A program made the translations under genes and the position numbers. 42,298 nucleotides of DNA, from assembly GCF_001194135.2 (NCBI RefSeq), contig NC_068987.1:31551891-31594188 (forward strand), written 5' to 3'. This stretch comes from Octopus bimaculoides. Taxonomy: Eukaryota. Below the pieces are notes generated by a model. The model saw only the letters and a list, made by a program, of their open reading frames with translations, did not search any database and was not told where the DNA came from. Of the stretch, positions 20,764-42,298 are shown in pieces; position 1 is the stretch's first letter, and each line of letters starts with the position of its first letter.

Positions 20764-20802
<39 letters not shown>

Positions 20803-22444: not shown

Positions 22445-23241
22445 AAAGCTGAAGAGAACACCTATGCTGAACTACTAAGAAATCTGCAGTTACTGTATCC
22501 AGGTTACAAGTTCAGGTTTATGCCTGTAATTATTGGGGCCCTGAGATATATAACACGCTGCCTAAACACCAATCTTGAGAAATTGGGCTTCTCGAAACCA
22601 GAAAGAAGCAAGCTAATTCAAAGACTACAGATCCAATACATCACTGGAACTGTAAAAATCTGTAAAACTTTCCAGAAGTTTATCATTTAAGTATATATGA
22701 GCATGTCTAGATAAGTAACTATGTGCATGAGAATACATACATACATACATACATACACACATACATACATGCATACATACATACATACATACATACATAC
22801 ATACATACATACATACATACATGCATACATGCATCTCATCATCAAATCACACCGTATATTCTTGTGTTTCTATAAATCTTGTTATGAACAAAAGAAAGAG
22901 GATATCTAACTTTTTGGGTCCACACGAAGGTCCTGATTATGTCCCATGGAAACCCTCCAAGACTTGTGAGATCATCTAACTGCACTGTGGTTGTATATAT
23001 ACATAAACCCTGAGTCTTCAACGTGTTAGGTACACACGTTAGCTTTATACACTACTGACTTAATGTTTCACGTATACATACGTAAATGCATACCTACCTA
23101 CTTACCTACCTACCTACCTACCTACCTACCTACCTACCTGACGGGTAATCATGGTGGGTATACTGAGTTTCGTATATTTTACCCCAGTATCACTTTGATG
23201 GCATGCACTGTTCTCTCACTCAGTAATAATAACAATAACAT

Positions 23242-23957: not shown

Positions 23958-24979
23958 AAAAGGAATTAATAAATCCAGGAAGATATTTATAAAATACTCA
24001 GTGTTAAACAAATTTTGTTAACTATATCCAGCAATCAGATACCAATAAATGAAAGTAATTCTTCGTGTGTGACATGTAAATCCAAATATAGCTTAGAAAA
24101 ATTTCAAGAAATTCGAAGTGTTAGGCAACAACAATAAGAATGGAGAAAAGCGCATGATGATTACACCATACATTAGTGACGATCGTTTCTACTGTGCCAA
24201 AATATTTAGATATAGAAAAAAGGTACAAAATACCGGTCAAATTAATATATCTGAAAATATATGCTAACACAACGTTATCATGACTTTCCAAAATGGGTTA
24301 CATTCACAGTGAACTAAGAAAATAGACAAACGTATTTTTAAAAAAATAGAAAAAGAAAAAATCATGAAGAAATATAATATTCTATGAAAAGCCAGTTTAT
24401 TAGTTAATTTTTATGATGTCAGTAGATAACAAAAGAATAAAAAATAAAGATGGGAATTTGTCGCGACAATTAAAAACAGGAATTCTGCGTCACAGCAATT
24501 AGTTACTTATCAGATGTGCTAAAACATTTTTTTTCTAATTATGCATATTAGATTGTATGAAAAGCACTTATAATTAATGAGTTATTTAGTATTGAAATAC
24601 CCAAATATTTTTTCTATATTTATGAGGACATTTCAATGTAAAATTACCTTTACAATCTAATAATACTAATTTAGAAGTAATATAATACAGTTTCTCAAGG
24701 CAAAGATCGCATTTAAAATTACCAATATTGTACAATCGTGCGCAACCAATAATGGACCACTTTAGATAATAGTTATTGCTTCTGTATTTTAAATCTCAAA
24801 TGCACTTAATAATTCATAGAATTACATTTTCTTCTATACTTAAATGAGAGAGAATTATTATGTAGCAGGAACGTTCTTCTCTTATGACCTTACATTGATA
24901 CACTATATTCTTAATTAAACACTGATTTTCTAAAGAACAGATAATTTTGTTTTTTGAAATCACAAAGGCATTTATTCAC

Positions 24980-25193
24980 CTGTATGTGGTACTCATGGTT
25001 AAAGGAATTAATACTAATCCTCCTCTCAGACGTAGACGCTAAGGCAGGATTATTATCAGTATTATAATTAATATTATTACTAGTCGTTATTTTAAAGGTA
25101 TTATCACAGCTGAAATTACTATTATCTAAAGTATCAAAATCTAATTCAGGAAAATTAGCAACAGAGTTAATTCCACAATTCACACTACTGGTT
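24980..25193 (-). other. Candidate coding exon of unknown gene
   Basis: Open frame of about 71 codons in very AT-rich DNA ending at a CAG|GTGAAT donor; acceptor weak; no recognisable domain. Confidence 0.2.
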
Positions 25194-25273
25194 CTACACG
25201 TGCTTACAGATGTATGTACGTACGTACGTATACATGTATGTATGTATGTATGTATGTTCAGATCGCATAAGAC

Positions 25274-25454
25274 AACTACTGGTAACACGTAATCAATAAA
25301 ACCAGCCGCATTTTTGAGCCGTCGGTGATTAGAGAGGCAACCACGCCAATTTTCCTTCTTCAGGAAAGTGATTTTGGACTCTTTGTAGGACGATAAACAA
25401 GAACTATCAAAGAGTAGACGATATCATGAGAGTCAATGGCCATACAATAATATA

Positions 25455-25500
<46 letters not shown>

Positions 25501-25789
25501 TTAAATATGCGTGTGTGTATTTAGAGGAACTTACAGAGTGAGTACTGTCTCTTCCAAAGCTTAAATCAACAGTAAGACCCTCCTGACAGCTTTTGCAAAA
25601 TTACCGAAGGGAAAAATATCCTGGGAGAAGCCTGATAGACGGTTATTGACAGAGAAAGTTCAAGTTCAGCAGGAAAACCCTCAGCGTCCATAGTCCAAAA
25701 GAACTATTTTTGTTGAGGTTATGTACCAGTCCAGCTTGTAGTTGAACGTACAATACTTGTAGCTAAAACTACTGGTAACACGTAATCAA
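25274..25789. repeat. 23-bp perfect direct repeat flanking 470 bp
   Basis: AACTACTGGTAACACGTAATCAA at 25274-96 and 25767-89. Confidence 0.85.
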
Positions 25790-25852
25790 AAAAAAAAGGC
25801 GACCAAAAGGTGCAAGCTCATAGCCTGCTTGAATATGATGTACCACTTATAC

Positions 25853-26089
25853 CGGTAGTTCTCAATCAGGGTTCACATGACCCTTGGGTGTCCACGTAAG
25901 ATTTTATTGCTAAAATTTATGTGCAATAAACTGGTTATATTTCTACAATAAACTATGTTTCTTTATACAAGTAGTAATGATATTTAATTCTAAAAATAGG
26001 ATTTTTTAGATATCGAATGGCTATGAGGGTTCAATCAAACAAAATAGGAACCAAAGGAATCCAAAAGTAAAAATTATTGAGAACCGATG
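25853..26089. mobile_element. hAT-type MITE
   Basis: Ends CGGTAGTTCTCAA / TTGAGAACCGATG (CAGTGGTTCTCAA type); TSD ACTTATAC / ACTTATAT. Confidence 0.8.
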
Positions 26090-26139
26090 ACTTATATAGA
26101 GATTGATCGAATGCATTCATATAGGATATGGGTGAAAAG

Positions 26140-26636
26140 AAAGTAGTCTGGAGCTGTGCCGAACTCCTCATCTACAAAGCTGCCCTTAACGAAGAGAAAA
26201 AGCTTCACCGAAACCTGTATAACTAGACTATAAAGAAGGCGTTTGGGTCTTCTTCGCTCAGGATAGTAAAGTCACTATGTCTTGCTAACGTTCCGACAGC
26301 TATGATCCAAGAGATTAAGAGACAAGTAATCTGGTCAACAGAGCTGTCAATAAGAACTGAAGTTACTACTAGAGTCACAAACAGAACTAGGCTACCAACA
26401 GGAATATTTCAAGCTGATAGCTTATCTGTAATACGCTAAGTTCTAGTAACGAACTCCTTCTCAACTCTGTTAAGGAAATATAAAGTTTACTTGTTAAGAT
26501 CTGCAGATGAAAGTTAAATTAATGTCAACTCTACCTTTTTTGTTAAAGATAAACTGTACACGAATAATATTTACAATACCAAGAGCAAGTTAGATTACAA
26601 CTTTTTTGAGAGATATAGGAATGAGATTCGATCAGG
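26140..26636 (+). mobile_element. R4-type reverse transcriptase fragment, 5' part
   Basis: DYK(K)AF, GIFQADSLSVI (26401), FFVKDKLY (decayed YxDD region), DIGMRFDQ. Confidence 0.8.
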
Positions 26637-26863
26637 AGAGTATGAAACGATCTGGTACAGTAGTTTGTCCCTGACAATTTAATATCAAGCGTTTTGTACT
26701 CAGAATCTTTTGATAATGGAAAATTTTGTTTCTGTTCTAGTTAACTAATTTATCACAACTACTAAACTACTCAGCTACTAAACATCGTCTAACTTACTGC
26801 TTTCTGGCTAGTGAAAGCGTTTATGTCGACTGGTTTCAATTAATAAATTGTAATCTCTCTTTT

Positions 26864-26943
<80 letters not shown>

Positions 26944-28622
26944 CAAAAATTTAGATTCAAGTGAATATGGTACTTTAGTTGAGGCACCAGAATTTAGCAC
27001 GGTATTATCCATACAATTTCAAAGTAAGGTGATTAAAATCAAAATAAGCAACAAGGATATCCAGAAGTAATGCAGTACGATCGGTTCATGCATCTCCATT
27101 TAATTGAACAATGAAATCATTACATCAATTTAAAATGCAGAGCAATCTTCAACTGCTCAAAGATAGAATTTAATTAAATTAGAACAGATGGACTCATTAG
27201 TATAATTATGCCTAAAATCTCCAAGAATTTAAGGAGATAGACAAAGAACATGTTGTCTCTACTACAACATAGAAGTTAATAAATTGTCAAGAAGACTCTG
27301 CCTGTCACTGATTTTATTTGTTTTTATGGGGTCAGTTTTAATTTATTGACTAGTTTATCAAACCTTATACCTAAGGCTGAGAGAATAAAGGGCAGTATCT
27401 GCTAGGGATGGGGCTGAGAGAGCAGACAAATCATAGTTGGTATAGTCATAAAAATTATGAGGTTTCGTAAAGGAAAACTTAAAACAAGATGTTGGCTGAC
27501 AACTAAGGGGGTCGCCCACTAGCAGACCATTGATAATGAAACAGTGGAAGTCTTATCATGTAGTACTAAAGTTAAATGTTTTAAAACAATGTTACTATAT
27601 TGTATATAGATAAAGTTTATGGCTATTCAGAGGATTATTAAGAAGAATATATTAACAAAAGGATAAAAATTTATGGATACTTTTGAGTATATACCGAACT
27701 TTTACCACAATAGTGGGAGGAAAAGAAATTATTCAGAAATAGTTTAATATTTATACATATTGTACACTTAAATACTAACTCTTCAGATGGTATTTGTGAA
27801 CATTGATTAATTGGTATACGCTGGTATTAATAAAGAGTATTGAGGTAAAAGAACATTCTAATTATATATTAATAAAATTGTAATCTAAGCAGTTTTTTTT
27901 TTTATATGTAGTGAATATACCAGCATAGTTTTATATAAGCTAAGCATGAATTTATAGAGATACAAAGATTAGGTTAATTTTATGAATAAATAAAGGCTAA
28001 TTATAAAATAATAAAGAAATGAAATAAAATAATCAAGTAGGGCAGAACACCATAGAAAAGGAATAAAATAGCTTAATTACTAATACTATGGTAAAGTATA
28101 TGCAGCTTATTAACACCAATAGAGAAGATTTATAGAAGTATAATAATTCAAAATATACTGGACTAAAAATTATATATTTACTTATTTAGTTAATATCAAT
28201 GAAAGACTGATGTCTGGTATCAGTTAAAAGAATATTTAAGTTATGGAACTTTCATATTTTACACTAATCTTTCCATATATAAACTGAGGGATTATATTAT
28301 AAGGTTTAAGAAGTTATTATTGTTACTCCTTACATGATATTTATAGTTTCTTAGTGGTACTTGTTTAGAAGGGTTATTTATATAAAGGCCTTTATAAAAT
28401 ACTAAGATCAGGAAGGTAGAGCCATTTAAGAAAGATATAAATCAAGTAATCTCTAAAGGTCATTTCAAACAATATTGTCTTATTGTACAAAGTTGAAATT
28501 CAGGGTAATCAAGAAAATTATTAAGAATGAAATTTTAGCAAAACAATAAAATAAATATACACATATGCTTTTATGTGTATATTTCTTTGCGCAAGTGTGC
28601 GTGTGTGCGTGCGTGCGTGTGT

Positions 28623-28694
<72 letters not shown>

Positions 28695-28794
28695 CTCCCG
28701 CGGCAAAAAGTACTGTCGCCCAAACATTCAATGTCCAGTCAGCCGTGACAAATCGCCAGAGTCCTAACAGTGGTGTCCGATCGTTTCATTCCGT
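26637..28794. mobile_element. 2158-bp TIR-bounded insert (non-autonomous DNA element with cargo)
   Basis: 16-bp TIR matching at 13/16 (AGAGTATGAAACGATC / GATCGTTTCATTCCGT); flanked by GATCAGG / GGTCAGG; excision rejoins the RT frame. Confidence 0.7.
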
Positions 28795-28801
28795 GGTCAG
28801 G

Positions 28802-29145
28802 GTAAATGTTCACATCTTATAATCAAACGAGGAAAGACATTCGATTAGACAAAAAATATGGATGCCAATGATCTGTTTGTTTCTCCAAGCTCCAGTGATG
28901 AACGTCAAAAATATCTCGGAAGCGACGTGAATATTGCATACGACAATATTGCTAAAATGACAAAGGAACATATCAACAGACTTCTGAAGGTATGGAAGTC
29001 AGAATTGTCTGCATCCATTAAAATCATATCCCAACACACTTTCGCAGTGCCGGCGCCAGTACCAACATTAGCAATACAAGACTAAATATTTGAAGAAATC
29101 CGCAACTTGAACATCAAGACTAGGAAGATATTAACAATCGTTTAA
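28802..29145 (+). mobile_element. R4-type RT fragment, 3' continuation
   Basis: KCSHLIIKRGK...QKYLG...KVWKSELS...HTFAVP...EEIRNLNIKTRKILT. Confidence 0.82.
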
Positions 29146-29395
29146 CATTTTGACATAAAGTCAACAATTTTAATAGAGTGGGTAAGTCAATTACATCAAC
29201 CCCAGTGATAGTGACTGTTAACTTTCACATCAACAGCGACGCTGACAGGATTTATGTTAAATAAAAGGATGGACGGCCATTTAAGTGCCGCATCGTGTCA
29301 CTTAGGCAACTGAATTGTAAAGCGAGAAATGGGTCTGTGTGGTAATTGTTCTCTTGATTGAATTTTACTGTGCTTTCAGTTGTTTATATTCTTCA

Positions 29396-29553
29396 CAGGC
29401 GTGGTCCCAGGTATTTTTCGAAAGGGAGGGCACAGGGTTAGACGAGATTACAATTCTAGGAGAAAAGGGCGTAATAACATTATTTGGAAGGGCGCACTTC
29501 TTTTCTTGAGAAAGCGCATACCTCTCAGGTACCCCCATGTGGGTCTGCCCCTA
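29396..29553. mobile_element. Probable short MITE (AGGGGCGGATCC-type ends, degenerate)
   Basis: CAGGCGTGGTCCCAGG ... GGGTCTGCCCCTA; no clean TSD. Confidence 0.35.
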
Positions 29554-31004
29554 CTTCACTCGTTATTACTGCTTGTTTACAACTGGTTACCGTTCATTCG
29601 TGTAATGTCAGCATGTTCGTCTCAGTTTTATTGTTATCGCACAGGTCGTGGTCCGTATTGTTTACAGTGTTCCCAGAAGAAGAATCTACTGCTCTGTTCT
29701 GGCTCATTTAATTTAGTACTTTGATGATCTGTAGGGATAACAGCAAATTCTTCTAGTCGAAGGTTGCTTGTTGACGAAACTGTTTGGCACTGAAGGGTCA
29801 GTTGTTAGAGTATTTTAGATCTCAATCACTCTGTAGCAGAATATTCAGCATTTAACTTATAATGGTAGTTGGTATACAGAGACAGACGGACAGAATTCAA
29901 CTTGTTCAATGGCAAGGTTTATTTACAGTAGTGGGTTATGTACAATATAAATGCCTTGTATAAGATTTCTGTCAAGAAGTAAGTTGTGTTTTATAGAGAT
30001 GTCTATAGTGTGATAGCGGTGAATAAATGCGTGAAGACATTAGATATACTTTGTGTAGATAGAAAGAGACTTGATAGAGATGTTTCTTGAAAACATTAGA
30101 GATAACAGTATTGAGTTTGATCGATACTGCTGACGCACGTGGACGAAGAATTGTTCTTGTGTGAGACGCCAGCGCAAACGCGATAGAACCAAACTACAAG
30201 CCGGGAGCCCTTGGAGAAATAAATGAAGGAACTCAATTAAATATGGCCGCAGCCACATTTATGTAAGTGACAATCGGAGATTGTAAAGGGAGCCTGTTTA
30301 TTCCGCCAATCATAGACCGAATAGGGATGTAAACTTACTGTGTCGTTTGAGCCTACTTTGAGATTAAAAATGTATGTGTTAAACTAATGCTAGTATAGAC
30401 ATGCTACAACCTGATTAGTGCGATTTGCTGAAATGTTGCTCACACGATTAGCGAATCTGACCAATCGCAATTTCGCCTAGAAAGAATATTGTCCACGTGA
30501 TCGACAGGATCTGACTAATCACGACCTCATGTGGAATAGGACTTCAAAGACTAATTTCACTTACGACACCTTCTTTCCTGAGTCTCTCAATAGGTGAAAA
30601 ATGGCATACACACGCAACTAAGACCCAGAGAGCACAGAGAGAAAGTCTTTGGTTGCAGCAAAGACGGCTGACAGTCAATATGACGAATAGACACGGGCAG
30701 CGGCTGAGTCGATCTAATATCATCATGAAGATCTCCCTACACCAATACAGAGCTAATTTTCAACTAACGAACTATTCACAACTCAGTGGCCAGCAGTAAC
30801 TTTTCTATACTATTTCAATTGCAATAACATTTAAACTCTCTCAACATTTATCGTAACACTATTTCAATTGCACCAATTGCTATAAGATCCAACCCTCCCA
30901 CAAGAAATAAAGTCGTTCGTGAAAACCAACAGATTTCGTCATTTTCTTCTATGTACAACTGCTGACCCCTACGCTAAAAATAACAGTCAGCTCCTGATAT
31001 CGGC

Positions 31005-31135
31005 TTCGCCTTTAGGTATAAGGCCAGGAATTTCAGGGGAAAGGGTAAGTCGATTACATCGACCCCACTGCTTTACTGGTACTTATTTTATCGACCTCGA
31101 AAGGAATGAGAAGCAAAGTCGACCTCGGCAGAATA
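31005..31135 (-). mobile_element. SINE family A fragment
   Basis: Reverse match to the GTCGACTTTGC..TCGATAAA..AAGTACCAG core. Confidence 0.75.
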
Positions 31136-31631
31136 ATTAGCTCTTAATATCAGCAAGCAGATTAGCTAACAAGTCTAAGCAGTTAGCTTATCAGCTTCAA
31201 CTACAAGTCGTACTCAGCATCTCTCTCCAGCCACAACTTTTCATCCTTTTCATGTTGTCAGTTGAAGGATCTTACCCAGCTGTTCTTCAATTTTTTATAG
31301 AATTGTTACAAGTCCTGCGTCTATTCAAAGGTCATCTGAAATCCCTCTCGATAGTTCTGTGACTGGCGATAGCTGACCCCTATCTCCTATCCAAACAGGG
31401 TGTATGTTGTAATTATCCCACTTGGTGAGTTTCAGTAAATTTTCTCCACTTAATTACAGCTCTGATCTTCCTTAAAAAGGTGCCTCTTCGCATTTATCCG
31501 AAGATAGCCAATCTTATTTGCCAGACTTGTATCAATGGCAAAAGTTCTAGGAAACAGTATTCATTACAGGAAGTTGAATAATCATCGTTATGTATGTATG
31601 TATGTATGGATGGATGGATGGATGGAAGGAT

Positions 31632-31662
<31 letters not shown>

Positions 31663-31785
31663 GTTGGTTGTAGATGATGCAGTGATTGACACAGTTCACC
31701 AAAGACTTGTCATCAGCTCACTGAAGTCAGTGTCTTCAATGGACGAAGTAGTAACGGCAATAAGAAAGTTGAATGCATAAAAACA

Positions 31786-31988
31786 GCCGGGCGAAATGCT
31801 TAACAGTATTTCGTCTGCCACTACGTTCTGAGTTCAAATTCTGCCGAGGTCGACTTAGCCCTTTATTCTTTCGGGGTCGATTAAATAAGTACCAGTTACG
31901 CACTAGGGTCGTTATAATCGACTTAATCCGTTTGTCTGTCCTTGTTTGTCCCCTCTATGTTTAGCCCCTTGTGGGTAATAAAGAAATT
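31786..31988 (+). mobile_element. SINE family A, 5' truncated
   Basis: near-identical to 32975-33207. Confidence 0.9.
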
Positions 31989-32069
31989 AAAAAAACAGAA
32001 TTTATGCTGAGGTCCAGTGATTTGACGGTAGTCGTATCGCACAGAATCTTCACGAGTTTATTTGTGTAG

Positions 32070-33790
32070 CGTAGAGGGATGGTACTGCTTTCCAAGGACT
32101 GGAAACATGCAATTATCCTTTCTCTCTATAAAGGAAAGTGAGTCAGACTAAAGTACGGCAACCATAGAGGTATTGCTCTTCTGTCAACAGCTGGCAAGGT
32201 TCTGGTAAGTATTCTTCTTACCGGCCCGAATAAATACCTTGAAAATGATGTCCTGTCCGAATCTCAATTAGGCTTCAGTTCTGAATGACGAACATTGTAC
32301 AGATGCATGAGAAGTGCTAAGAGCAGATTAACGATCTTGTCCAGGTTTCCATGGATCTTATTGTGGAAAATACTCGTCAAACTTGGTTGTCCGGGTTATT
32401 TTGTTTAGATAATTAAATCATATCAGGATGAAATGGTGACATGGATCAATATCCCCCGAAGAGAAAGACGTTAAGTAATGTGACATTTTTGCCCCAGCTC
32501 TCTTTTCTTTGCATTTTCTTGTTGCTCCCACTTATGCTTTTGAGGCAGATTGCTCTTCTAGGATGTATGTGGAGTATCGATCTTCCACTCGTCTCTTGAA
32601 CATGCGTCGGTTTGCTGTCAATACGTAAGTTTTTCAATCTCTTATTCGTGACCTCCTTTATGCGGATGATTGCAACTAAGTCGCTCATACTGTTGAAAAT
32701 GTACAAATTTTCAGGACCATAACTCTACATATTGCCAGGCATTTTTACTCAGCATTAACCTGGACAAGACTATAATAATGTTCCAGCCTACGCTAAGAAA
32801 CATATGTGATACTCTCTATTTTAGTTAACGGAACAGTACTGAAAGTGGTCGACAAGTTTGTCTACTTGGACAACACACTCATCCGTTCTTGCTCCTTAAA
32901 TGAGGAAACGGCTTCAAAAGGCTTCAGAAGGCATCAGATTCCTTCAGGGTCTTGTCTCGTTACTAGTCCCAATAAAAAGGCGGCGAACTGGCAGAAACAT
33001 TAACACGCCGAGCGAAACGCTTAGCGGTATTTCGTCTGCCACTGCGTTCTGAGTTCAAATTCCGCCGAGGTCGACTTTGCCTTTCATCCTTTCGGGGTCG
33101 ATAAATTAAGTACCAGTTACGCACTGGGGTCGATATAATCGACTTAATCCGTTTGTCTGTCCTTGTTTGTCCCCTCTGTGTGTAGCCCCTTGTGGGCAGT
33201 AAAGAAATAGTCCCAATATTGCATCACGAGGCGAACAAAAGTTGCCGGGTACCATGCGTTGCTCTCTTACTGATGTGAGACATGTACTCTTTACAGGTAT
33301 CATGTAGGGTCCTTGAAAGCTTCCATCAAAGACGGTCTGAGATACACTCTAAATGTCGGCTGATTTTTGCAGGTTCCAGATAGAGCTCTTGGAAGGAACC
33401 GACGTTATAAGCACTAAGGTGATCGTGCACAAGTATGTTTCACTTGGACTAAACATATTGTTCGGGTGACTAATCGGTGGATCCCGAAATAGATGTTATA
33501 TGGCAAACTTGTTTATAGAAAGCTCCCCCAACAGAAACCAAGACTATGATTTAAGGATTGTGTAAAGTCTTCGCTGAAAGAATGCGAAATATGAGAGGTC
33601 AATTGGAAGAGAAATAGCGGAAACAGATAAAGGAAGGAGTGGATATTTTTTAAGACACACGCATTTGTATGCTGAACTTAATCAGGTTGCTCGAAAGGCA
33701 CTGCCCGCGTAATGAATGAGGGAAGCTTGGTCTGCGATATCTACGGTTGTTGTATGTTTATCAAGGGCTGGGCTCGTTAATCATCAGCAA
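32070..33790 (+). mobile_element. Decayed RTE-clade LINE (RT and downstream region)
   Basis: GNHRGIALLSTAGKVL (32158), ESQLGF, RDLLYADDC (32647-73), VDKFVYL, MLYGKL...KDCVKSSLKEC; many stops. Confidence 0.85.
32975..33207 (+). mobile_element. SINE family A, full length, inserted in the RTE
   Basis: B-box-like GAGTTCAAATTCC; 11-bp TSD TAGTCCCAATA (32964-74 / 33208-18). Confidence 0.92.
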
Positions 33791-33949
33791 CGCTACGGAT
33801 ATAAAAGGTCAGTGATTAATTTGAAAGATTCACACAGACACAATGAAACAAGAAAGAAGAGAGATGAGGAAGGAAAAAAAGGAGGGTTCACAAAGCAGCG
33901 GATGACGGAGTGGGGACGATGGACCACATATCCCAGAACAAATGGGGTG

Positions 33950-34720
33950 TTCAGCTGCGCACCGCAGTAATGACCGCGATGGCGTTGACCCCACAGAATG
34001 GCCGGCGGCACTCGCTGCAGCAACCACATCACCTCGCGCGGCTCATTTCTTCGATAGACCCCGCTATACTTATTTTGCGGAGGAAATCAGTAGTGTCCCA
34101 GAAGGAAGAAATCAGAAGAAATACGGCGGCGAGCTGGCAGAAACGTTAGTATGCCGGGTAAAATGCTTAGCGGTATTTCGTCTGCCGCTACGTTCTGAGT
34201 TCAAATTCCGCTGAGGTCGATTTTGCCTTTCATCCTTTTGGGATTGATAAATTAAGTACCGGTTACGCACTGAGGTCGATGTAATCGACTTAATCCCTTT
34301 GTCTGTCCTTGTTTGTCCCCTCTCTGTGTAGCCCCTTGTGGGCAATAAAGAAATATGAAGGAAGAAATCGGTAGTATCTCAGAGCATTTAACGTCTTGAT
34401 GATGACTGGCACAAACTGATAGAGCCTGTTCAGGCTCCTGTGTACATTGAGTTCTCTCTCCTGTGCGTTACGGGCGGCAACAGCAGGGTTTGCAGCAGAT
34501 GCTGCGAAGTTAGAGCCGGAGAACGTGTCGTGGTACATCGCGTCCCAGACCAGAGATCTGCTTCCCTCGAATGGGAAGAGGGTTATCCCGTCGGAGAGCT
34601 TACCGGTGCCGCAGTTGAGACCTGCTGACTCAAGTTGAGACGGAAAGCCAGCCGTGTCAAAGCGCGTACTGAGTATGTCAACCTGTGGTACGAGTGGACA
34701 ACCATCATCATAGATGTGTA
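33950..34720 (-). mobile_element. CRE-type non-LTR element C-terminus (REL endonuclease), interrupted by a SINE
   Basis: FDTAGFPSQLESAGL..GKLSDGITLFPF..SLVWDA..DTFS..FVPVIIKT then NEPREVMWLLQRV. Confidence 0.72.
34125..34355 (+). mobile_element. SINE family A, full length
   Basis: matches 32975-33207; GAAGGAAGAAATC repeated on both flanks. Confidence 0.9.
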
Positions 34721-34723
34721 GAC

Positions 34724-35002
34724 CAGGGGTTTTCAAACTGTTTGACTTGCCGACCCCTTTATATTTCAGGCTTTACCTTAGGGACCCAATTATAAACGCT
34801 TATGAAATTTATACATAAATATTTGCTTAAAATAACATATATTTTTACATTTATTTATTTAACAGTATTTAACAAATGGGTTTATTGTCAATTAAAAGAT
34901 TTCGATTAAAAAACATATATAAAATCAAATTGCCCATAAAAAGTATTTGCTGTCTACGGACCCCCTGTCTTGTCCTTGCGGACCACAGTTTGAAAACCCC
35001 TG
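34724..35002. mobile_element. hAT-type MITE
   Basis: Perfect 17-bp TIR CAGGGGTTTTCAAACTG; perfect 8-bp TSD GTGTAGAC (34716-23 / 35003-10). Confidence 0.95.
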
Positions 35003-35125
35003 GTGTAGACGAACGTACGTATGCGTGTGTTTATGTTTTTATATACAATACAATACATTCACGTATGTATGGAGAATGATAAAAACAATAAACAGGAGAT
35101 AGGCTCACGATGAAAATTATAGATA

Positions 35126-35355
35126 TACGAGGGGGTGCTGAAAAGTGACTGGCTTGGGGTAAAAATAAATACAGGAGGATCGGTTAATTGTGATTTTATC
35201 CAACATATTCCCCTCCCATATTCACATACTTATAGCAGCGGTCCTTCAGTTTTTCTAAGCCCTGTAAAAGAACTCGGAATGTTAGGCCTCCAGCCAGGCA
35301 TTTCGCGACATCCTTAAAGCCAGGAACTTTTCAGTACACCCCCACCCCACACGTA
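35126..35355 (-). mobile_element. Mariner-derived MITE, same family as 19554-19776
   Basis: reverse-complement similarity along its length. Confidence 0.8.
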
Positions 35356-35665
35356 TATGTATACAACAACATGCTATGAGAGGAGGTAAAGTAAGTGGGC
35401 GGGACATTTAATATCTGTATGACACACAAATGAAGTTCGCGAGATAAATTAAATAGTTTGAAAAAACAACGATTTTCAGTCTGGTCTGCTGTGACCAATC
35501 AACAACTATTATTACTCATTGAAACATGTTAAATTGTTCTCTCTCCCACTTTCTTTCTCCCCCCCTCTCTCTCTCTTTCTCTTTCTCTCTCTCACACACA
35601 AACAAACAAAGACACACATGCACACCCATATACACACTCCGCCTATCTTACTGTTTTCTGTCAAG

Positions 35666-35687
35666 TTTTCTCTCTTCCCACATTTAG
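35666..35687 (+). other. Possible splice acceptor 13 nt upstream of the ATG
   Basis: TTTTCTCTCTTCCCACATTTAG polypyrimidine tract plus AG. Confidence 0.4.
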
Positions 35688-35700
35688 TATTTTTATCCTC

Positions 35701-35898
35701 ATGGATAAACAGCGGGTTTTAGCTTCGCTGCGAACACTGATATTCATTTTTTATTTTCTATGTATTTCACGCACTTTTCGTTATGTTCAAGCCCATGGAC
35801 GCTTATGGGAACCTTGTGCTCGCTCTAGCATGTGGCGGAAAAACTACCCGACCCCTGCAAATTATGAGGACAACGAACTTTACTGTGGCGGAATCAAC
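35701..35898 (+). CDS. First coding exon of a secreted AA15-family lytic polysaccharide monooxygenase (chitin-active LPMO-like)
   Basis: MDKQRVLASLRTLIFIFYFLCISRTFRYVQA|HGRLWEPCARSSMWRKNYPTPANYEDNELYCGGIN: hydrophobic signal peptide ending V-x-A, His1 at 35794, AA15 HGRL.EP..R.SMWR and P.NY.DNEL.CGG motifs; phase-0 GTGAGT donor at 35899. Confidence 0.9.
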
Positions 35899-36204
35899 GT
35901 GAGTATTTATTCATTTATAAACAACATTCAAGACAGTTGTAATTCATCTACTTCTGTGTGTGTGTGCGCGTGCAAGGGTGTGTGTATTATACTACAAGTG
36001 TATATCTACGTGTTACTGCATCTCTCGCTTGTTGCTTGTTTATCTCTACACTTCTCTCTTTTTATCTCCCTCCCTCTCTCTCTCTCTCTGTGATGTATGT
36101 ATGTATATCTTCATATATGTAATAATAAAAATAATATGTGAGTATATGCATATATACGTACATGTATGTACATACCTACATCTACATGTATATGCAGATG
36201 CATA

Positions 36205-36350
36205 TCTGGGTACATGGCGTCACAAGAAAACGTGGGCAAAATGAGAAACAGAACATAAACAGAGCACAGAAAACACACAGGCCACATAGAGAACATTTCC
36301 TTCATCAGCTGCCACCATTCTAAAACTAAGCGTTTCGAAGAGTTAGGGGT
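36205..36350 (-). repeat. Reverse copy of the 7605-7805 repeat family
   Basis: TTCATCAG and GTGGGCAAAATGAGAA reverse matches. Confidence 0.55.
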
Positions 36351-36384
36351 ATGTATGTATATATGTCTTTCTTTTACTTTTAAA

Positions 36385-36569
36385 TCGTTAGACTGCACAA
36401 TACTTGGGTACCGCTTTGAAGAATTTTTTGTCGAACGAAACGACCCCAGTGCATTTTGTGTAAGCCTAGTACTTATCTATCAGTCTCTTTTGCCGAACCG
36501 CTGCGTTACGAGGACGTAAACACACCAACACCGTTTTCGTTTCTTGGTGGGTGACAAAGACAGACATAA

Positions 36570-36639
<70 letters not shown>

Positions 36640-37010
36640 GTGTGTGTGTATTTATATTCTTTTATTCTTTTATTTGTTTCAGTCATTTGACTGCGGCCAT
36701 GCTGGAGCACCGTCTTTTTGTCGAACAAATCGACCCAAGGATTTATTCTTTGTAAGCCTAGTACTTGTTCTATCGGTCTGTTTTGCCGAACCGCTAAGTT
36801 ACGGGGATGTAAATACACCAACATCGGTTATCAAGCGATGATAGTAGGGACAAACATAGACACACAAACGCACACACACACACACACACATACGACGGGC
36901 TTCTTTCAGTTTCCGTTTATTAATTCCACTCACAAAGCTTTGGTCGGCCAGAGGCTATAGCAGAAGATACTTGTCCAAGGTGCTACACAGCAAGCTACTT
37001 ACCACACAGC
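36385..37010 (-). mobile_element. Two SINE family C copies (3' half 36385-36567; near-full 36655-37010)
   Basis: reverse match to 20574-21030. Confidence 0.85.
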
Positions 37011-37541
37011 CATCATTTTTAAACTGAATTTTTACTTAACAACATATTTTACAGGAACAAAAAAGAAGAGAAAAATGTTAAAAGTATAAAAGATGAAAAT
37101 ATCGAGAGAAAAAATAGAATCCTTTCTACAATCTTCAACAAAGAAACAAAAAGAAAGAAAGAAAGAAAACAAAGTTCGGTGAGGGAGTAGTCTGGGATGT
37201 GTGAGAAGTTCGTAATAGTTCAGATCTAAACAGATACACTAGGATAAGGTAGAAATGAAGGAAGACCTACATAAGTGTGCTCGCCCCTCAGGACTTCGTT
37301 TCCTCATAACTTTCAGACAAATTGATATTTCGTAATGAAATTTTCTACAAATACCTTTCAGATAGTGTAGATTACAATTATATCAGAATTTGTATTGAAA
37401 CAAAATGCTATGAGCAAGATGAGAATGGAGTTTCAGATAATTCACACAAATCAATTTTGTATCCTCATAACTTTCAAAAAAGCAGGTATTTTTTTTTTAA
37501 TGAAATTTTATTCAAATACTTTTCAAATGGTGTACATTATG

Positions 37542-37698
37542 CAGGGGCGGACTGAGAGTATTAAGGGCCCTCAGTCATAACTGTTTACCAGGCCCCTTTG
37601 AATGTGTGTTTTAGTAGAATTAACATGTAGAGTATGGACCCCTCAGAGCTCTGGGCCCTCAGACAATACCCACTTGCCGATGGCTCAATCTGCCCTTG
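37542..37698. mobile_element. hAT-type MITE (157 bp)
   Basis: TIR CAGGGGCGGACTGAG matching at 12/15; perfect 8-bp TSD ACATTATG (37534-41 / 37699-706). Confidence 0.9.
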
Positions 37699-37886
37699 AC
37701 ATTATGATTATATTGGAATTTATTGTGAAAACGAGGAGAAAAAATACCATTTAAGCACTCAGAACACACACCTATTAGTTTGAATTATCCTGACGTAAAC
37801 TCCTCATATCCTCTCTCTCTCTCTATGTGTGTGTGTTTGTGTGTGTGATGCATGTCAGTATGTGTGTGTGTGTGAGTGTGTGTGTG

Positions 37887-37931
<45 letters not shown>

Positions 37932-38010
37932 CCAGTCCAATGATGGATTAGCTGGTCAAAACTTCAAAGTCATTGTCAATACTATTCTTGTTGAAGAATA
38001 AAAAGATTTA

Positions 38011-38927
38011 TACCACGTGGTATCAAAATGTTCCCAGACTAGTTTTGGAGTGTGCCAACAGATGGCACAGTGGGAGCTAGCAGCGACTTTCATGAGGCTG
38101 TGTGTTGCATGACATTGCTGTGTTTACTTCACAAGTTGTGAAATTTGTGTTTTTGTGATCATGTGATTGCTGTAATCTGTAATTTTTGTCATGGACAGGA
38201 AGCTGGAACAAAGAGCAAATGTGAAACTTTGTGTTAAACTTTGGAAGTCTGCTACAGAGACATTGAGCATGCTTCGGCAAGATTACAGCGACGAAGCAAT
38301 TGGTTGCACCCAATGTTTTGAGAGGCATGGGCACTTGAAAAGCAGAAGAACGTTCCTGAAAGACAATGGGTGATCTGGAAGACCTGCCACGAGCATCACC
38401 CACCAAAATGTGCTATTGTGCATTGAGAATTTATGTCCAGGGCCAGACCATTAATCAGGAGTTCTAATGTAATGTTTTGAAGTGTTTGAGGGAAGATATT
38501 CGGTGAAAGCAACCAGATCTGTGGAGCACAAAGAATTGGATTCTTCAAGACAACAATGCACCCTGTTACCAAGTTCTCTTCACTCTTGAATTTCATTTCT
38601 TGCCATAAACAACATAGTATCATGTCCACACGTGCCCTGTTTGCCATATTTAGCACCTGTGGACTTCCATCTCTTCCCCCAAGATGAAGATGCAGCTCAA
38701 AAGTTGTTGTTTTAACACTGCTGCTGAGATCCAGGCTGAATTGCAGAAGGGCCTTGATTTGCTTATGGAAAACAATTTCCAGACCAGATTTGAAAATGGC
38801 AGAAACGCTGGGACCCATGTATGGCTGCACAAGGTGACTATTTTGAAGGAGATGATGTTTAAAATTAGGTAGATAAGTTATTTTCTATTACACAACTAGT
38901 TCAGGAACTGTTTGATATCACCTCATA
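38011..38927 (+). mobile_element. Internally deleted mariner with both TIRs
   Basis: LEQRANVKLCVKLWKSATET..SGRP fused to LQDNNAP..LAPVDFHLFPKMK..; degenerate TIRs TATCAAAATGTTCCCAGACT / AGTTCAGGAACTGTTTGATA. Confidence 0.85.
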
Positions 38928-38984
38928 CTCTACCAAAAATATTGAGTAATTCTTCAGTTTATTATAACATAAAAACAAGCTTTA

Positions 38985-39014
<30 letters not shown>

Positions 39015-39016
<2 letters not shown>

Positions 39017-39230
39017 TCTTTTACTCTTTTACTTGTTTCAGTCATTTGACTGTGGCCATGCTGGAGCACCACCTTTAGTCGAGAAAATTGGCCCCAGGAC
39101 TTACTCTTTGTAAGCCTAGTACTTATTCTATCGGACTCTTTTGCTGAACCGCTAAGTCACGGGGACGTAAACACACCAGCATCGGTTGTCAAGCGATGTT
39201 GGGGGACAAACACAGACACACAAACATATA
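39015..39230 (-). mobile_element. SINE family C 3' half
   Basis: (TACTCTTT) tail and ATGCTGGAGCACC core. Confidence 0.88.
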
Positions 39231-39593
39231 CATACACACATACATACATACATATATAATATATATATATTTTATTTATTTATTTATTTACGGCCTCAAA
39301 CATCTCAATACCTTGCGCTNNNNNNNNNNNNNNNNNNNNNNNNNNNNNNNNNNNNNNNNNNNNNNNNNNNNNNNNNNNNNNNNNNNNNNNNNNNNNNNNN
39401 NNNNNNNNNNNNNNNNNNNAGAATATGCGGTACCCATCGACTTGCAGACAGTGTATTTCGTTGAATTAACTTATTTTGTAACTAAAATGACAAAAACCAC
39501 AATATAGAAATGCTTATGACATATATATACACAGATATATATATACATTTATATATATATGTATATATACACACACATATATACATACATACA

Positions 39594-39701
<108 letters not shown>

Positions 39702-39965
39702 CATATATATATAGAAGGAGCCAGAAAGAGAAATACTAAGGTGGTGGAGTGGTGTGATGGGAAATAACAGGCAAATGGTTAAAAACAAGCTGATGATGCC
39801 TGTTCTATGGACAAATTAAGTAAGGAGGGAAAGTTGGGTATAGAGATACATGCTTCGGTGTGTATATGTGACTGGAATCACATGTATGTATTTAGAAGTG
39901 TGTAAGTGTGGTTACAGTGGAATAGGTAAGTAAGGGTATGACGGTTGGTGTATGTGTAATAGCTA

Positions 39966-40098
39966 TACAGGGTGGGCCAAAAGACACGCACAAAATCAGC
40001 TCAATACGCCCAGGAATTGTCAAAGACATGCTTCAATTTTTCTAAAATTCAATAAAATAAATAAAATAATGACGCATTGCACATGATGAACGAAATGG

Positions 40099-40154
<56 letters not shown>

Positions 40155-40357
40155 TCTTTCTACTATAAGCACAAGGCCTGAAATTTGTGGGAGGGGGATA
40201 CTCGATTACATCGACCCAAGTACTCAACTTGTACTTATTGTATCGACCCCGAAAGGATGAAAGGTAAAGTCGATCGCGGTGGAATTTGAACTCATATCGC
40301 ATGTAATATAAATAATATGGCAAATGTTTTGGTGCGTGACGTTTGGACCACCCTATA
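39966..40357. mobile_element. Tc1/mariner-type MITE containing a nested SINE
   Basis: TA-flanked TIR TACAGGGTGGGCCAAAAGACACGCAC matching at 22/26. Confidence 0.75.
40098..40295 (-). mobile_element. SINE family A variant with (ATT)n tail
   Basis: reverse core TCGACCCCGAAAGGATGAAAGG; (AAT)n at 40098-40153. Confidence 0.85.
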
Positions 40358-40924
40358 TAAACACACGTAAATGCTGTATATATACACACACACGTAAATG
40401 TCGAACAATGACAATGAGTGTTCAACACCGCATTGGTGGATAAAGATTCTTTATTTGTGTATTAAGGCTATCATCGGTTTTATATTAATAAAATATCTTA
40501 ACAATTTTTCAAGCCGATCACATGGAGGGATTGGGTGTTCATCTCAATTTTGGATTAAAACACGTAAAAAAAAAGTAATGAACACGGGAATTCACGATAA
40601 AGTCTCGCAGGAATTTTTGGTAAACAAAACAAAACATCGAGGGAGACGATTCATAGGTAACAACTGTTGGGTGATTATCTACCTTGGCTTTAACTTTTGG
40701 AAAAATTGTGCTGAATGATAAATTTGTTTATATTATGTGATATCCTGGGTATGTGTAGTGTTCGTACGTTTGTGTATTGAACGAGTTCATCACGAGAGCA
40801 TGTGTCTTCTATGTGTAGAGTTCATATGATGTATATATTAAATCTTCAGGTTCAGAGAGAAAAAAAAAGAAACCTATCTCGGTAGAGTGGGTGGTGGTTC
40901 CTCTTTGAAATGTCGGAATATAAA

Positions 40925-41102
40925 ATATTGCTGATGCATACTCCATGTTATCTGGAAGTTGCTTACTGTTTCTTCTTTCAATATCCATATCATATTAGAT
41001 AGGGATGTTTCGTGTCTTTTCTTTTTGTCCTTGAATGACGCCAGATGCTGTGTGTATCTTTCCTCGAACGAGTTGCTCATCATTCCAATGTAAGTCTTTG
41101 TT
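40925..41102 (-). mobile_element. Penelope-like GIY-YIG endonuclease fragment
   Basis: KTYIGMMSNSFEERYTQHLASFKDKKKRHETSLSNMIWILKE. Confidence 0.82.
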
Positions 41103-41714
41103 NNNNNNNNNNNNNNNNNNNNNNNNNNNNNNNNNNNNNNNNNNNNNNNNNNNNNNNNNNNNNNNNNNNNNNNNNNNNNNNNNNNNNNNNNNNNNNNNNN
41201 NNNNNNNNNNNNNNNNNNNNNNNNNNNNNNNNNNNNNNNNNNNNNNNNNNNNNNNNNNNNNNNNNNNNNNNNNNNNNNNNNNNNNNNNNNNNNNNNNNNN
41301 NNNNNNNNNNNNNNNNNNNNNNNNNNNNNNNNNNNNNNNNNNNNNNNNNNNNNNNNNNNNNNNNNNNNNNNNNNNNNNNNNNNNNNNNNNNNNNNNNNNN
41401 NNNNNNNNNNNNNNNNNNNNNNNNNNNNNNNNNNNNNNNNNNNNNNNNNNNNNNNNNNNNNNNNNNNNNNNNNNNNNNNNNNNNNNNNNNNNNNNNNNNN
41501 NNNNNNNNNNNNNNNNNNNNNNNNNNNNNNNNNNNNNNNNNNNTGAATGCATGGGTCTTGAAAGTACTTTTGCATTTCATAGTGCTAGCTTGAGGGGTGT
41601 TCTAGCACAGAGATGTGGTCAGCTCATTATAGTTGGGTACTTGCTTTTAAGGACTTCACAAACCTTTCATATTTTTTGTTGGTCCCAAGACTTCAAGCGT
41701 TTTCTGATGAAAAG

Positions 41715-41920
41715 AATCAGGACTTGAACTGGAAACGCAGTGATCCGAAATAAATACCCCGAAACATCTTGTCCGACGCAATAACTTTCTGCCAATCTAC
41801 CGCACTGGATTGATATTTTATCGATATCTAGGATGAAAGGCTAAGTTGATTAGGAAGTATTTGAACTCAGAACAACGCAGTATGCAAGAATACCCCCGAA
41901 ACATTCTCTGCCAACTTCAT
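41715..41920 (-). mobile_element. Two decayed SINE family A remnants
   Basis: reverse GGATGAAAGG..TTTGAACTCAGAAC and CTGCCAATCTACCGC heads. Confidence 0.6.
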
Positions 41921-41929
41921 TCCCTCCCC

Positions 41930-42234
41930 AACATGTATGTATGTATGTATGTATGTATGTATGTATGTATGTATGTATGAATGTATGTATGTATGTGTGT
42001 ATGTGTGTATGTATATACCTGTTCATATATGTTTATCTATGCTCGTGTAAATATATATATATATATATATTCATGTATGTATGTATGTATGTATGTATGT
42101 ATATATGTATATATATATATATATATGTGTGTTATACATATGTACGTACACATATTTATATATATATGCTTACACACACACACACACATATATATGCCAG
42201 GGCATATGTAATCTTTTTTTATGTGTGTGTATGC

Positions 42235-42298
<64 letters not shown>
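41930..42298. repeat. (TATG)n/(TA)n/(GT)n low-complexity tract
   Basis: direct reading. Confidence 0.95.

What the first reader, a model, noticed from the sequence alone, without database searches (positions are those of the whole stretch)
35701..35898. Secreted copper LPMO (AA15) gene start in a cephalopod-like genome
Seen: a 31-aa signal peptide followed directly by His, then AA15-like motifs and a clean GT donor. Known: LPMOs need an N-terminal His for the copper His-brace, and AA15 enzymes oxidatively cleave chitin/cellulose in arthropods and other lineages. Inference: this could remodel beak, radula or gut-lining chitin, or digest crustacean prey. I know of no functional characterisation in cephalopods.
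Basis: partly seen in the sequence, partly recalled or inferred. Interest (0 to 1): 0.75.

Follow-up and report, generated by a model that had tools for sequence, protein, structure and literature searches.

The report
Octopus AA15 LPMO gene, first exon
This is the real first exon of an octopus copper enzyme gene (an AA15 lytic polysaccharide monooxygenase, most likely chitin-cleaving and tethered to the cell surface), but the gene family is already annotated and published for octopuses, so it is a correct call rather than a discovery.

Summary
Window 35701-35898 (+) encodes a 31-residue signal-peptide-like leader, then His32 and a 35-residue stretch that keeps every invariant N-terminal residue of animal AA15 LPMOs. 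It ends at a GTGAGT donor.

The best solved-structure match is Thermobia domestica AA15 (5MSZ), residues 1-33, with His aligned to His1.

The window is collinear over about 15.6 kb with the Octopus sinensis locus of LOC115214156. That 260-aa protein contains a complete LPMO_10 domain, and its exon 1 is 86% identical to the window's, with the same donor. In O. sinensis intron 1 is 49.9 kb, which explains why no further exon lies in the 6.4 kb remaining in the window.

The orthologue has the second His (T-A-N-H), an axial Phe rather than Tyr, ten conserved Cys, and a C-terminal hydrophobic tail that looks like a GPI or membrane anchor.

The O. bimaculoides RefSeq model LOC106875858 lies on an unplaced scaffold. 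It has exons 2-3 but a spurious N-terminus. The window's exon supplies the missing part, provided the window is from that species.

AA15 genes in cephalopods ("octopodes") are already mentioned in the literature. I found no functional study. Novelty is low; the practical value is a gene-model correction.

The parts
35640..35700 (+). Conserved 5' flank / probable 5' UTR directly upstream of the start codon
   Evidence: The last ~60 nt before the ATG are ~97% identical to O. sinensis, against 81% for the surrounding block. Its role as UTR or core promoter is inferred.
35495..35499 (+). CCAAT motif within the conserved GTGACCAATCAA, ~200 nt upstream of the ATG (possible promoter element)
   Evidence: Conserved in the window / O. 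sinensis alignment. This is a consensus match only; function was not tested.
35701..35793 (+). Start codon and 31-codon signal-peptide-like leader (MDKQRVLASLRTLIFIFYFLCISRTFRYVQA)
   Evidence: Identical to O. sinensis at 29 of 31 residues. Predicted as a helix at residues 2-25 in the AF2 model of the orthologue.
35794..35796 (+). His32 codon (CAT): predicted N-terminal His1 of the mature enzyme and first ligand of the copper histidine brace
   Evidence: Aligns with His1 of TdAA15A 5MSZ and with position 1 of Pfam LPMO_10.
35794..35898 (+). First 35 residues of the mature AA15 catalytic domain (HGRLWEPCARSSMWRKNYPTPANYEDNELYCGGIN). Includes Cys62, the first of the ten conserved cysteines, and a species-specific extra Cys39.
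35899..35904 (+). Splice donor GTGAGT of intron 1 (phase 0)
   Evidence: Same position as the annotated intron 1 in O. sinensis LOC115214156 and in the paralogue LOC106877023/LOC115222289. The first 12 intron bases are identical in O. sinensis.
35899..42298 (+). First 6.4 kb of intron 1, running off the window. Contains SINE-like repeats, a degenerate mariner-like remnant, microsatellites and two N gaps.
   Evidence: tblastn with 13 full-length AA15 proteins found no further AA15 exon. Collinear with the O. sinensis intron as far as window 39256. The orthologous intron is 49.9 kb.

Best explanation
Window 35701-35898 is coding exon 1 of a three-coding-exon gene for an AA15-family lytic polysaccharide monooxygenase, in an Octopus genome. 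It is the orthologue of O. sinensis LOC115214156, and probably the missing first exon of O. bimaculoides LOC106875858.

Shown:
- The exon encodes a leader followed by His32 and the conserved AA15 N-terminus.
- It ends at a conserved phase-0 donor.
- The locus is syntenic with the O. sinensis gene.
- The orthologous exons 2 and 3 supply the rest of a complete LPMO_10 domain: the second His in T-A-N-H, an axial Phe, ten Cys, and a fold superposing on TdAA15A.

Inferred mechanism:
1. Signal peptidase cuts after Ala31, so His32 becomes the free N-terminus.
2. Its amino group and imidazole, together with the second His, hold one copper ion (the histidine brace).
3. Reduced Cu(I) uses O2 or H2O2 to oxidise and break glycosidic bonds at the surface of a crystalline polysaccharide.
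4. The substrate is most likely chitin, given the Ala/Phe active-site pattern and the animal context.
5. The C-terminal hydrophobic tail, preceded by small residues (S-S-A-S), probably acts as a GPI-attachment signal or membrane anchor. The enzyme would then work at the surface of chitin-secreting epithelia rather than as a soluble gut enzyme.
For: - Exon sequence and donor.
- 5MSZ match with His aligned to His1: E=3.8e-6 for the exon alone; E=4e-44 for the orthologue, residues 32-222 against 1-192.
- 959 relatives at E<=1e-3; nine of the ten full-length ones scanned carry LPMO_10 over 1-183/183.
- Orthologue P0225 has an N-terminus 86% identical to the window's (57 of 66 residues).
- Synteny of window 23686-39256 with L005 1-15315.
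- Exon structure: identical donor, 49.9-kb intron 1.
- dN/dS of 0.28 for exon 1.
- The composite of the window exon plus O. bimaculoides exons 2-3 gives LPMO_10 1-183/183 at 71 bits. The RefSeq model matches only profile positions 56-183.
- AF2 model of the orthologue: pLDDT 86.3, with terminal helices at 2-25 and 239-259. Foldseek top hit 5MSZ: E=3.7e-21, TM 0.91, rmsd 1.7 A.
- The only two hydrophobic segments are the N- and C-termini.
- Literature: axial Phe and chitin activity in TdAA15B and insect LPMO15-1, and C-terminal transmembrane spans in insect group II (PMC5823890, PMC9156745); GPI anchors recorded in AA15 (PMC8615602).
Against: - Only exon 1 is in the window. Its link to exons 2-3 rests on orthology, not on a transcript from this species.
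- No RNA evidence was available for this gene in any Octopus. The 90% cluster of the orthologue holds genome-derived models only.
- Pfam does not detect the 66-residue peptide on its own.
- Signal-peptide cleavage and the GPI anchor are rule-of-thumb inferences; no predictor was run. The c-region is long and carries two Arg, and a second plausible cleavage site exists after Ser23.
- The window has Cys39 where the family consensus is Pro and O. sinensis has Val. This gives an odd number of cysteines close to the copper site.
- Substrate and activity are untested.
- The species of the window is inferred only from divergence levels.
Confidence: 0.85

Rival explanations
1. The gene is a freely secreted digestive LPMO that helps break down crustacean-prey chitin in the gut or digestive gland.
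For: Catalytic-domain-only AA15s are midgut digestive enzymes in Thermobia, and insect group III is midgut-specific (PMC5823890, PMC9156745). Octopuses eat crustaceans (general knowledge).
Against: The orthologue and its relatives in O. bimaculoides, Argonauta and an unidentified species end in a hydrophobic tail. This resembles the C-terminal transmembrane span of insect group II, which is expressed in carcass and not midgut (PMC9156745). In the shipworm, a mollusc, endogenous AA15 expression in digestive organs is very low (PMC8561940). No octopus expression data were available here.
Confidence: 0.15
2. The exon is a relic: an orphan or unexpressed first exon of a gene that is broken in this species.
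For: Only exon 1 is in the window. No transcript evidence was found. In O. bimaculoides exons 2-3 lie on a separate unplaced scaffold with a different predicted first exon. There is an unusual extra Cys39.
Against: The 66-codon ORF is intact, with the start codon, donor and upstream 60 nt conserved. dN/dS is 0.28 against O. sinensis. Exons 2-3 are intact in O. bimaculoides and O. sinensis. The window and that scaffold map to non-overlapping, correctly ordered parts of the O. sinensis locus, as expected from a fragmented assembly rather than a rearrangement. A 60%-identical relative is assembled without introns in at least 73 sequencing-run assemblies, i.e. it is transcribed in some species.
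Confidence: 0.05
3. The protein is an LPMO-like, surface-anchored copper-binding protein (copper uptake or sensing, in the manner of fungal GPI-anchored X325/Bim1) rather than a polysaccharide-cleaving enzyme.
For: A histidine brace combined with a GPI-like tail is the architecture of X325/Bim1 (PMC10952591, PMC8615602). There is an extra Cys eight residues from His1 in the window. The function of insect group II (membrane-anchored) AA15s is unknown (PMC9156745).
Against: Sequence and fold match the catalytic TdAA15A closely (41% identity, TM 0.91). The next hits are active AA10/AA9 LPMOs, and no X325 entry appears among the listed matches. The active-site Ala, His and Phe pattern is that of chitin-active LPMOs (PMC5823890, PMC9156745). 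The extra Cys is not shared by O. sinensis.
Confidence: 0.07

Closest known systems
Octopus sinensis LOC115214156 (XP_029639091.1, 260 aa); O. vulgaris CAI9725955.1; O. bimaculoides LOC106875858 (XP_014779646.1); Argonauta hians GAB1608443.1
   Same: Orthologues. Exon 1 is 86% identical in protein and 89% in DNA, with the same donor. About 15.6 kb of the locus is collinear.
   Different: The window has nine amino-acid differences in exon 1, including Cys39 for Val. The O. bimaculoides RefSeq model lacks this exon and starts with a spurious 40-residue N-terminus that has no signal peptide or His.
TdAA15A from Thermobia domestica (PDB 5MSZ), founding structure of CAZy family AA15
   Same: N-terminal His after a leader; H-G-x-L-x-x-P-x-x-R-S-S-M-W-R motif; second His preceded by Ala two residues earlier; ten Cys; same fold.
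   Different: The axial residue is Tyr184 in TdAA15A and Phe in the octopus orthologue. TdAA15A is a catalytic domain only, found in the gut and active on cellulose and chitin. The octopus protein has a C-terminal hydrophobic tail (PMC5823890).
Insect group II LPMO15-2 (signal peptide + AA15 domain + C-terminal transmembrane span)
   Same: Same domain architecture (PMC9156745).
   Different: Phylogenetic relationship was not tested. The octopus tail has almost no cytoplasmic extension, so it looks more like a GPI signal than a transmembrane anchor. The function of insect group II is itself unknown.
Insect group I LPMO15-1 (required for cuticle turnover at moulting) and TdAA15B (chitin-specific)
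   Same: AA15 domain with an axial Phe; chitin as substrate (PMC9156745, PMC5823890).
   Different: Group I carries C-terminal 6-Cys motifs. That feature is seen in the other two Octopus paralogues (LOC106877023 and LOC106879916/LOC115215838), not in this gene.

Membership tests
CAZy AA15 / Pfam LPMO_10 (PF03067) | Leader peptide immediately followed by His, so that His is residue 1 of the mature protein | tested here: met
   At sequence level: basic n-region, hydrophobic core, V-Q-A|H. His32 aligns with His1 of 5MSZ and with profile position 1. The same arrangement occurs in 11 aligned relatives.
CAZy AA15 / Pfam LPMO_10 (PF03067) | Actual cleavage by signal peptidase exactly before His32 | not testable with these tools
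   No SignalP and no protein data. A rule-of-thumb alternative site exists after Ser23.
CAZy AA15 / Pfam LPMO_10 (PF03067) | Significant sequence similarity to a characterised AA15 (TdAA15A) | tested here: met
   Exon alone: E=3.8e-6, residues 1-33. Orthologue: E=4e-44 over 191 residues.
CAZy AA15 / Pfam LPMO_10 (PF03067) | Pfam LPMO_10 score above the gathering threshold | tested here: inconclusive
   The window peptide alone gives no hit because it is too short. The composite with O. bimaculoides exons 2-3 scores 71 bits and the orthologue 68.4 bits, against a cut-off of 23, both over 1-183/183.
CAZy AA15 / Pfam LPMO_10 (PF03067) | Second histidine of the copper brace, with Ala two residues before it | tested here: met
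   Not in the window. Present as L-T-A-N-H in exon 2 of O. sinensis and O. bimaculoides, aligned with Ala89/His91 of 5MSZ.
CAZy AA15 / Pfam LPMO_10 (PF03067) | Axial aromatic residue (Tyr or Phe) near the C-terminus of the domain | tested here: met
   Phe in Q-E-Q-F-Y-G-C-A-D aligns with Tyr184 of 5MSZ. It lies in exon 3, outside the window.
CAZy AA15 / Pfam LPMO_10 (PF03067) | Ten conserved cysteines (five disulfides) | tested here: met
   Ten in the mature O. sinensis orthologue. The composite has 11, because of the extra Cys39 encoded in the window (PMC5823890).
CAZy AA15 / Pfam LPMO_10 (PF03067) | LPMO immunoglobulin-like beta-sandwich fold | tested here: met
   AF2 model of the orthologue has pLDDT 86.3. 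Foldseek top hit is 5MSZ at TM 0.91 and rmsd 1.7 A, followed by AA10 and AA9 LPMOs.
CAZy AA15 / Pfam LPMO_10 (PF03067) | Copper binding and oxidative cleavage of chitin or cellulose | not testable with these tools
   Requires recombinant protein, EPR and product analysis.
Insect group II LPMO15-2 | AA15 domain followed by a single C-terminal membrane-spanning or anchoring segment | tested here: met
   Hydrophobic segment at residues 243-255 of the composite. Helix at 239-259 in the model. This is an architectural resemblance only; clade membership was not tested.
Fungal X325/Bim1 LPMO-like copper proteins | Sequence or fold similarity to X325 proteins | tested here: not met
   The only PDB sequence hit is 5MSZ. 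None of the listed Foldseek matches is described as X325/Bim1.

The most novel reading that the evidence does not exclude
This cell-surface-anchored, axial-Phe AA15 might not be a bulk chitin degrader. It could be a cephalopod epithelial factor that either edits nascent beta-chitin during formation of beak, radula, stylet or sucker linings, or serves as a surface copper-binding protein. The window species' extra Cys39 next to the histidine brace could modulate copper chemistry.
Probability: 0.1. Interest if true: 0.55.

Novelty: already known. Interest (0 to 1): 0.2.

Why it matters
The exon gives one octopus AA15 gene its correct start. The current O. bimaculoides RefSeq model for the orthologous gene lacks the signal peptide and the catalytic N-terminal His, so anyone expressing that model would obtain an inactive protein.

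Octopus carries at least three AA15 paralogues. Two have C-terminal Cys-rich motifs and one, this gene, has a membrane or GPI-type tail. This parallels the insect group I / group II split.

No cephalopod LPMO has been studied functionally. The corrected sequence is therefore a usable starting point for asking how cephalopods remodel beta-chitin structures. It is not a new kind of system.

Tried and rejected
- Pfam on the 66-residue peptide alone gave nothing because it is too short.
- The first word-index protein search returned only two short fragments and missed the 86%-identical O. sinensis orthologue. For a time I wrongly concluded the exon was unannotated everywhere. The orthologue surfaced only when I searched with the Octopus paralogue.
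- An exact-sequence look-up of the 130-aa read-through ORF found nothing on record.
- tblastn of 13 full-length AA15 proteins against the whole window found only exon 1.
- A weak match, 'LTGNHGGYTEFRI' at 23138-23176, resembles the second-His motif. It lies upstream of exon 1, abuts a (TACC)n microsatellite, and has no surrounding ORF or splice sites, so I rejected it as chance.
- I considered whether exon 2 hides in the 441-nt N gap at 41103-41543. This is unlikely, because the orthologous exon 2 lies about 50 kb from exon 1 and the window ends at roughly 18 kb in O. sinensis coordinates.
- The TARA fragment P0080, which also has a Cys near the same position, sits on a 605-bp contig of unknown origin and was uninformative.
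- A tRNA scan, run to see whether the SINE-like repeats contain recognisable tRNA sequence, found no tRNA genes.
- Pfam on seven other window ORFs gave only a weak HTH_23 match for one and nothing for the rest.

Full report
**1. What is in the sequence**

Window 35701-35898 on the + strand is an open reading frame starting at an ATG. It reads MDKQRVLASLRTLIFIFYFLCISRTFRYVQA | HGRLWEPCARSSMWRKNYPTPANYEDNELYCGGIN and is followed directly by gtgagt at 35899-35904.

The first 31 residues look like a signal peptide:
- a basic n-region, with net charge +2 in the first 11 residues;
- a hydrophobic core at about residues 12-23, with a Kyte-Doolittle 9-mer mean up to 2.99;
- V-Q-A at positions -3 to -1.

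Codon 32 (35794-35796, CAT) is His. No signal-peptide predictor was available, so cleavage exactly before His32 is an inference. The c-region is long and holds two Arg. By the -3/-1 rule, a site after Ser23 is also conceivable.

**2. Is it more than chance?**

Yes.
- The 35 mature residues hit only one relevant solved structure, Thermobia domestica AA15 (5MSZ), residues 1-33, at E=3.8e-6, with His aligned to His1.
- An exhaustive phmmer search of the 66 residues against 1.84 billion representatives gave 959 proteins at E<=1e-3 and 16 at E<=1e-10.
- Many of those hits are 60-100-residue fragments ending just after C-G-G. These are first exons called on eukaryotic contigs.
- Nine of the ten full-length hits scanned match Pfam LPMO_10 (PF03067) over 1-183/183, beginning at the aligned His.
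- In a 12-sequence alignment, all 14 invariant columns (H, G, L, P, R, S, M, W, R, N, D, C, G, G) are kept by the window peptide.
- Pfam does not detect the 66 residues alone. That is a length effect.

**3. The organism and the orthologue**

The window is a draft eukaryotic sequence. It has ten N gaps totalling 3,290 nt, microsatellites and interspersed repeats. The repeats recur at 70-96% identity in Octopus bimaculoides and O. sinensis loci.

Searching with an Octopus paralogue revealed O. sinensis LOC115214156 (XP_029639091.1, 260 aa; P0225). Its N-terminus, MDKQRVLASLRTLILIFYFLCISRTFHYVQAHGRLWEPVARSSMWRKHYGTPTNYQDNELYCGGVT, is 86% identical to the window's exon (57 of 66 residues).

Window 23686-39256 aligns collinearly with the first 15.3 kb of that locus at 79-91% identity, exon 1 included. 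The two loci are therefore orthologous by position as well as by sequence.

The divergence equals that of two O. bimaculoides loci against O. sinensis. The window is therefore O. bimaculoides or an equally distant Octopus. This remains an inference.

**4. Gene structure, and why the window holds only exon 1**

In O. sinensis:
- Exon 1 is 198 nt and ends ...CGGVT, followed by GTGAGTATTTAT. These are the same 12 bases as in the window.
- Intron 1 is 49.9 kb.
- Exon 2 encodes VQYKK...RWKYNAG.
- Intron 2 is about 12 kb.
- Exon 3 encodes GNSWG... to the stop codon.

The paralogue LOC106877023/LOC115222289 has a phase-0 intron at the same C-G-G-x-x| position.

tblastn with 13 full-length AA15 proteins found nothing credible elsewhere in the window. 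That is expected, because the window ends only 6.4 kb into the intron. A weak 'LTGNHGGYTEFRI' match at 23138 is a chance hit beside a (TACC)n repeat.

**5. An annotation problem the window resolves**

The O. bimaculoides member of the same 90% cluster is XP_014779646.1 (LOC106875858, 236 aa). It lies on an unplaced 20.4-kb scaffold.
- Its exons 2 and 3 are 87-88% identical to those of O. sinensis.
- Its first 40 residues (MNNVLKDVVWDTIENLL...) have no signal peptide, no His and no homology.
- Pfam matches it only over profile positions 56-183.

Joining the window's exon 1 to its residues 41-236 gives a 262-aa protein that matches LPMO_10 over 1-183/183 from His32, at 71 bits.

The scaffold aligns with O. 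sinensis coordinates 43-75 kb, and the window with coordinates 0-15 kb. They are in the same order and orientation and do not overlap. If the window is O. bimaculoides, it carries the true first exon of that gene.

**6. Catalytic features, taken from the orthologous exons**

- P0225 aligns with 5MSZ at E=4e-44, residues 32-222 against 1-192.
- His32 corresponds to His1.
- L-T-A-N-H corresponds to Ala89-x-His91.
- The Phe in Q-E-Q-F-Y-G-C-A-D corresponds to the axial Tyr184.
- The mature orthologue has ten Cys, as in TdAA15A (PMC5823890).
- An AlphaFold2 model built from a 30-sequence alignment has mean pLDDT 86.3. Its best PDB match is 5MSZ (E=3.7e-21, TM 0.91, rmsd 1.7 A, 41% identity), followed by AA10 and AA9 LPMOs.

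An axial Phe is the state in chitin-specific TdAA15B, in most chitin-active AA10s and in insect LPMO15-1 (PMC5823890, PMC9156745). Chitin is therefore the most likely substrate. This is inferred, not shown.

**7. Localisation**

The only hydrophobic segments in the composite protein are the leader and residues 243-255 near the C-terminus. The model makes a helix of residues 239-259.

The tail reads ...PNKPSSASKLTWNKHYLWLVLTAALVTGSVYSADI. It has small residues, a short polar spacer, a moderately hydrophobic stretch and almost no cytoplasmic extension. This is the usual look of a GPI-attachment signal, although a C-terminal membrane anchor is also possible.

Similar tails occur in the Argonauta orthologue and in a 60%-identical relative of unknown species.

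GPI anchors are recorded in AA15 (PMC8615602), and insect group II LPMO15-2 has a C-terminal transmembrane span (PMC9156745). The other two Octopus paralogues instead end in 6-Cys motifs, like insect group I.

I therefore favour a surface-tethered enzyme acting on the animal's own chitin over a soluble digestive enzyme. No expression data were available to test this.

**8. Is the exon functional?**

- Against O. sinensis, exon 1 shows 10.5 synonymous and 11.5 non-synonymous differences: dS 0.28, dN 0.079, dN/dS 0.28. The sample is small but points to constraint.
- The 60 nt before the ATG are about 97% conserved, against 81% for the surrounding block.
- A GTGACCAATCAA motif about 200 nt upstream is also conserved.
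- The 60%-identical relative P0043/P0175 is assembled as an intron-free 744-nt ORF in at least 73 sequencing-run assemblies. The lineage is therefore transcribed somewhere, but the organism is unknown.
- I found no transcript evidence for the Octopus gene itself.

One oddity: the window has Cys39 (TGT) where O. sinensis has Val (GTT) and the family consensus is Pro. This gives 11 Cys in the mature protein. It could be real or an assembly error.

**9. Comparison with what is known, and novelty**

- AA15 was defined in 2018 and was already reported in molluscs then (PMC5823890).
- A 2023 review lists cephalopods and 'octopodes' among AA15 holders (PMC10952591).
- RefSeq and UniProt annotate three Octopus paralogues with PF03067, as 'Chitin-binding type-4 domain-containing protein'.
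- Five literature searches found no functional work on a cephalopod LPMO.

However, the gene is an ordinary, already catalogued family member. The only new item is a corrected first exon for one gene model.

**10. Verdict**

This is a confirmed exon 1 of an Octopus AA15 LPMO gene.
- Confidence is about 0.85 for the identity together with the general copper-LPMO mechanism.
- Confidence is lower, about 0.6, for chitin as substrate and for surface anchoring.

Interest is 0.2. Novelty: already known.

Noticed in passing
window 35815-35817 (codon 39): Cys39 (TGT) lies eight residues after the catalytic His. O. sinensis has Val (GTT) and the family consensus is Pro. It gives an odd count of 11 Cys in the mature protein. 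It could be a lineage-specific change or an assembly error.
   Followed up: partly
L006 10001-10126 (O. bimaculoides scaffold LGKD02019231.1): The first exon of RefSeq model XP_014779646.1 (LOC106875858) encodes 40 residues with no signal peptide, no His and no homology. It appears to be a spurious prediction inside intron 1. The window's exon fits as the true first exon.
   Followed up: yes
window 1869-2228 (+): N-terminal fragment of a Mos1/mariner-type transposase (Pfam HTH_48, E=8e-16), cut off by the N gap at 2231-2673.
   Followed up: partly
window ~38176-38870 (+): Degenerate, frameshifted ORFs that look mariner-like to me but gave no Pfam hit. The block is collinear with O. sinensis intron 1 at 88.5%, so the insertion predates the species split.
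   Followed up: partly
window 3102-3433, 20575-21087, 36643-36990, 39012-39270: A SINE-like interspersed repeat of about 330-450 bp. Dozens of copies at 70-91% identity occur in the O. sinensis and O. bimaculoides loci fetched. ARAGORN found no tRNA genes anywhere in the window.
   Followed up: partly
window 31786-31997, 32977-33210, 34122-34360: A second repeat family of about 210-240 bp, present three times within 2.6 kb just upstream of the gene. It is also scattered through the O. sinensis locus at 84-91% identity.
   Followed up: no
window 9455-9843 and 9854-10226: Two adjacent ~380-bp direct copies that match the same O. sinensis repeat regions at about 90%, separated by a 10-N gap (9844-9853). 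This is possibly a scaffolding artefact rather than a true tandem duplication.
   Followed up: no
window 10529-10828 (+): An ORF containing ...RMDRMRNEEVRRRAGM...WFGHMERMDEERM..., which from memory resembles the C-terminal tail of non-LTR retrotransposon reverse transcriptases. Pfam gave no hit.
   Followed up: partly
whole window: Ten N gaps totalling 3,290 nt (7.8%), two of them inside intron 1 (39320-39419 and 41103-41543). This is typical of a short-read scaffold assembly.
   Followed up: yes
L007-L014 (Logan run assemblies): A 247-aa AA15 protein, 60% identical to the O. sinensis orthologue and with the same kind of C-terminal hydrophobic tail, is encoded without introns on 1.5-1.7-kb contigs in at least 73 sequencing runs. 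It is presumably the transcript of the orthologue in another cephalopod, but the organism is not identified.
   Followed up: partly
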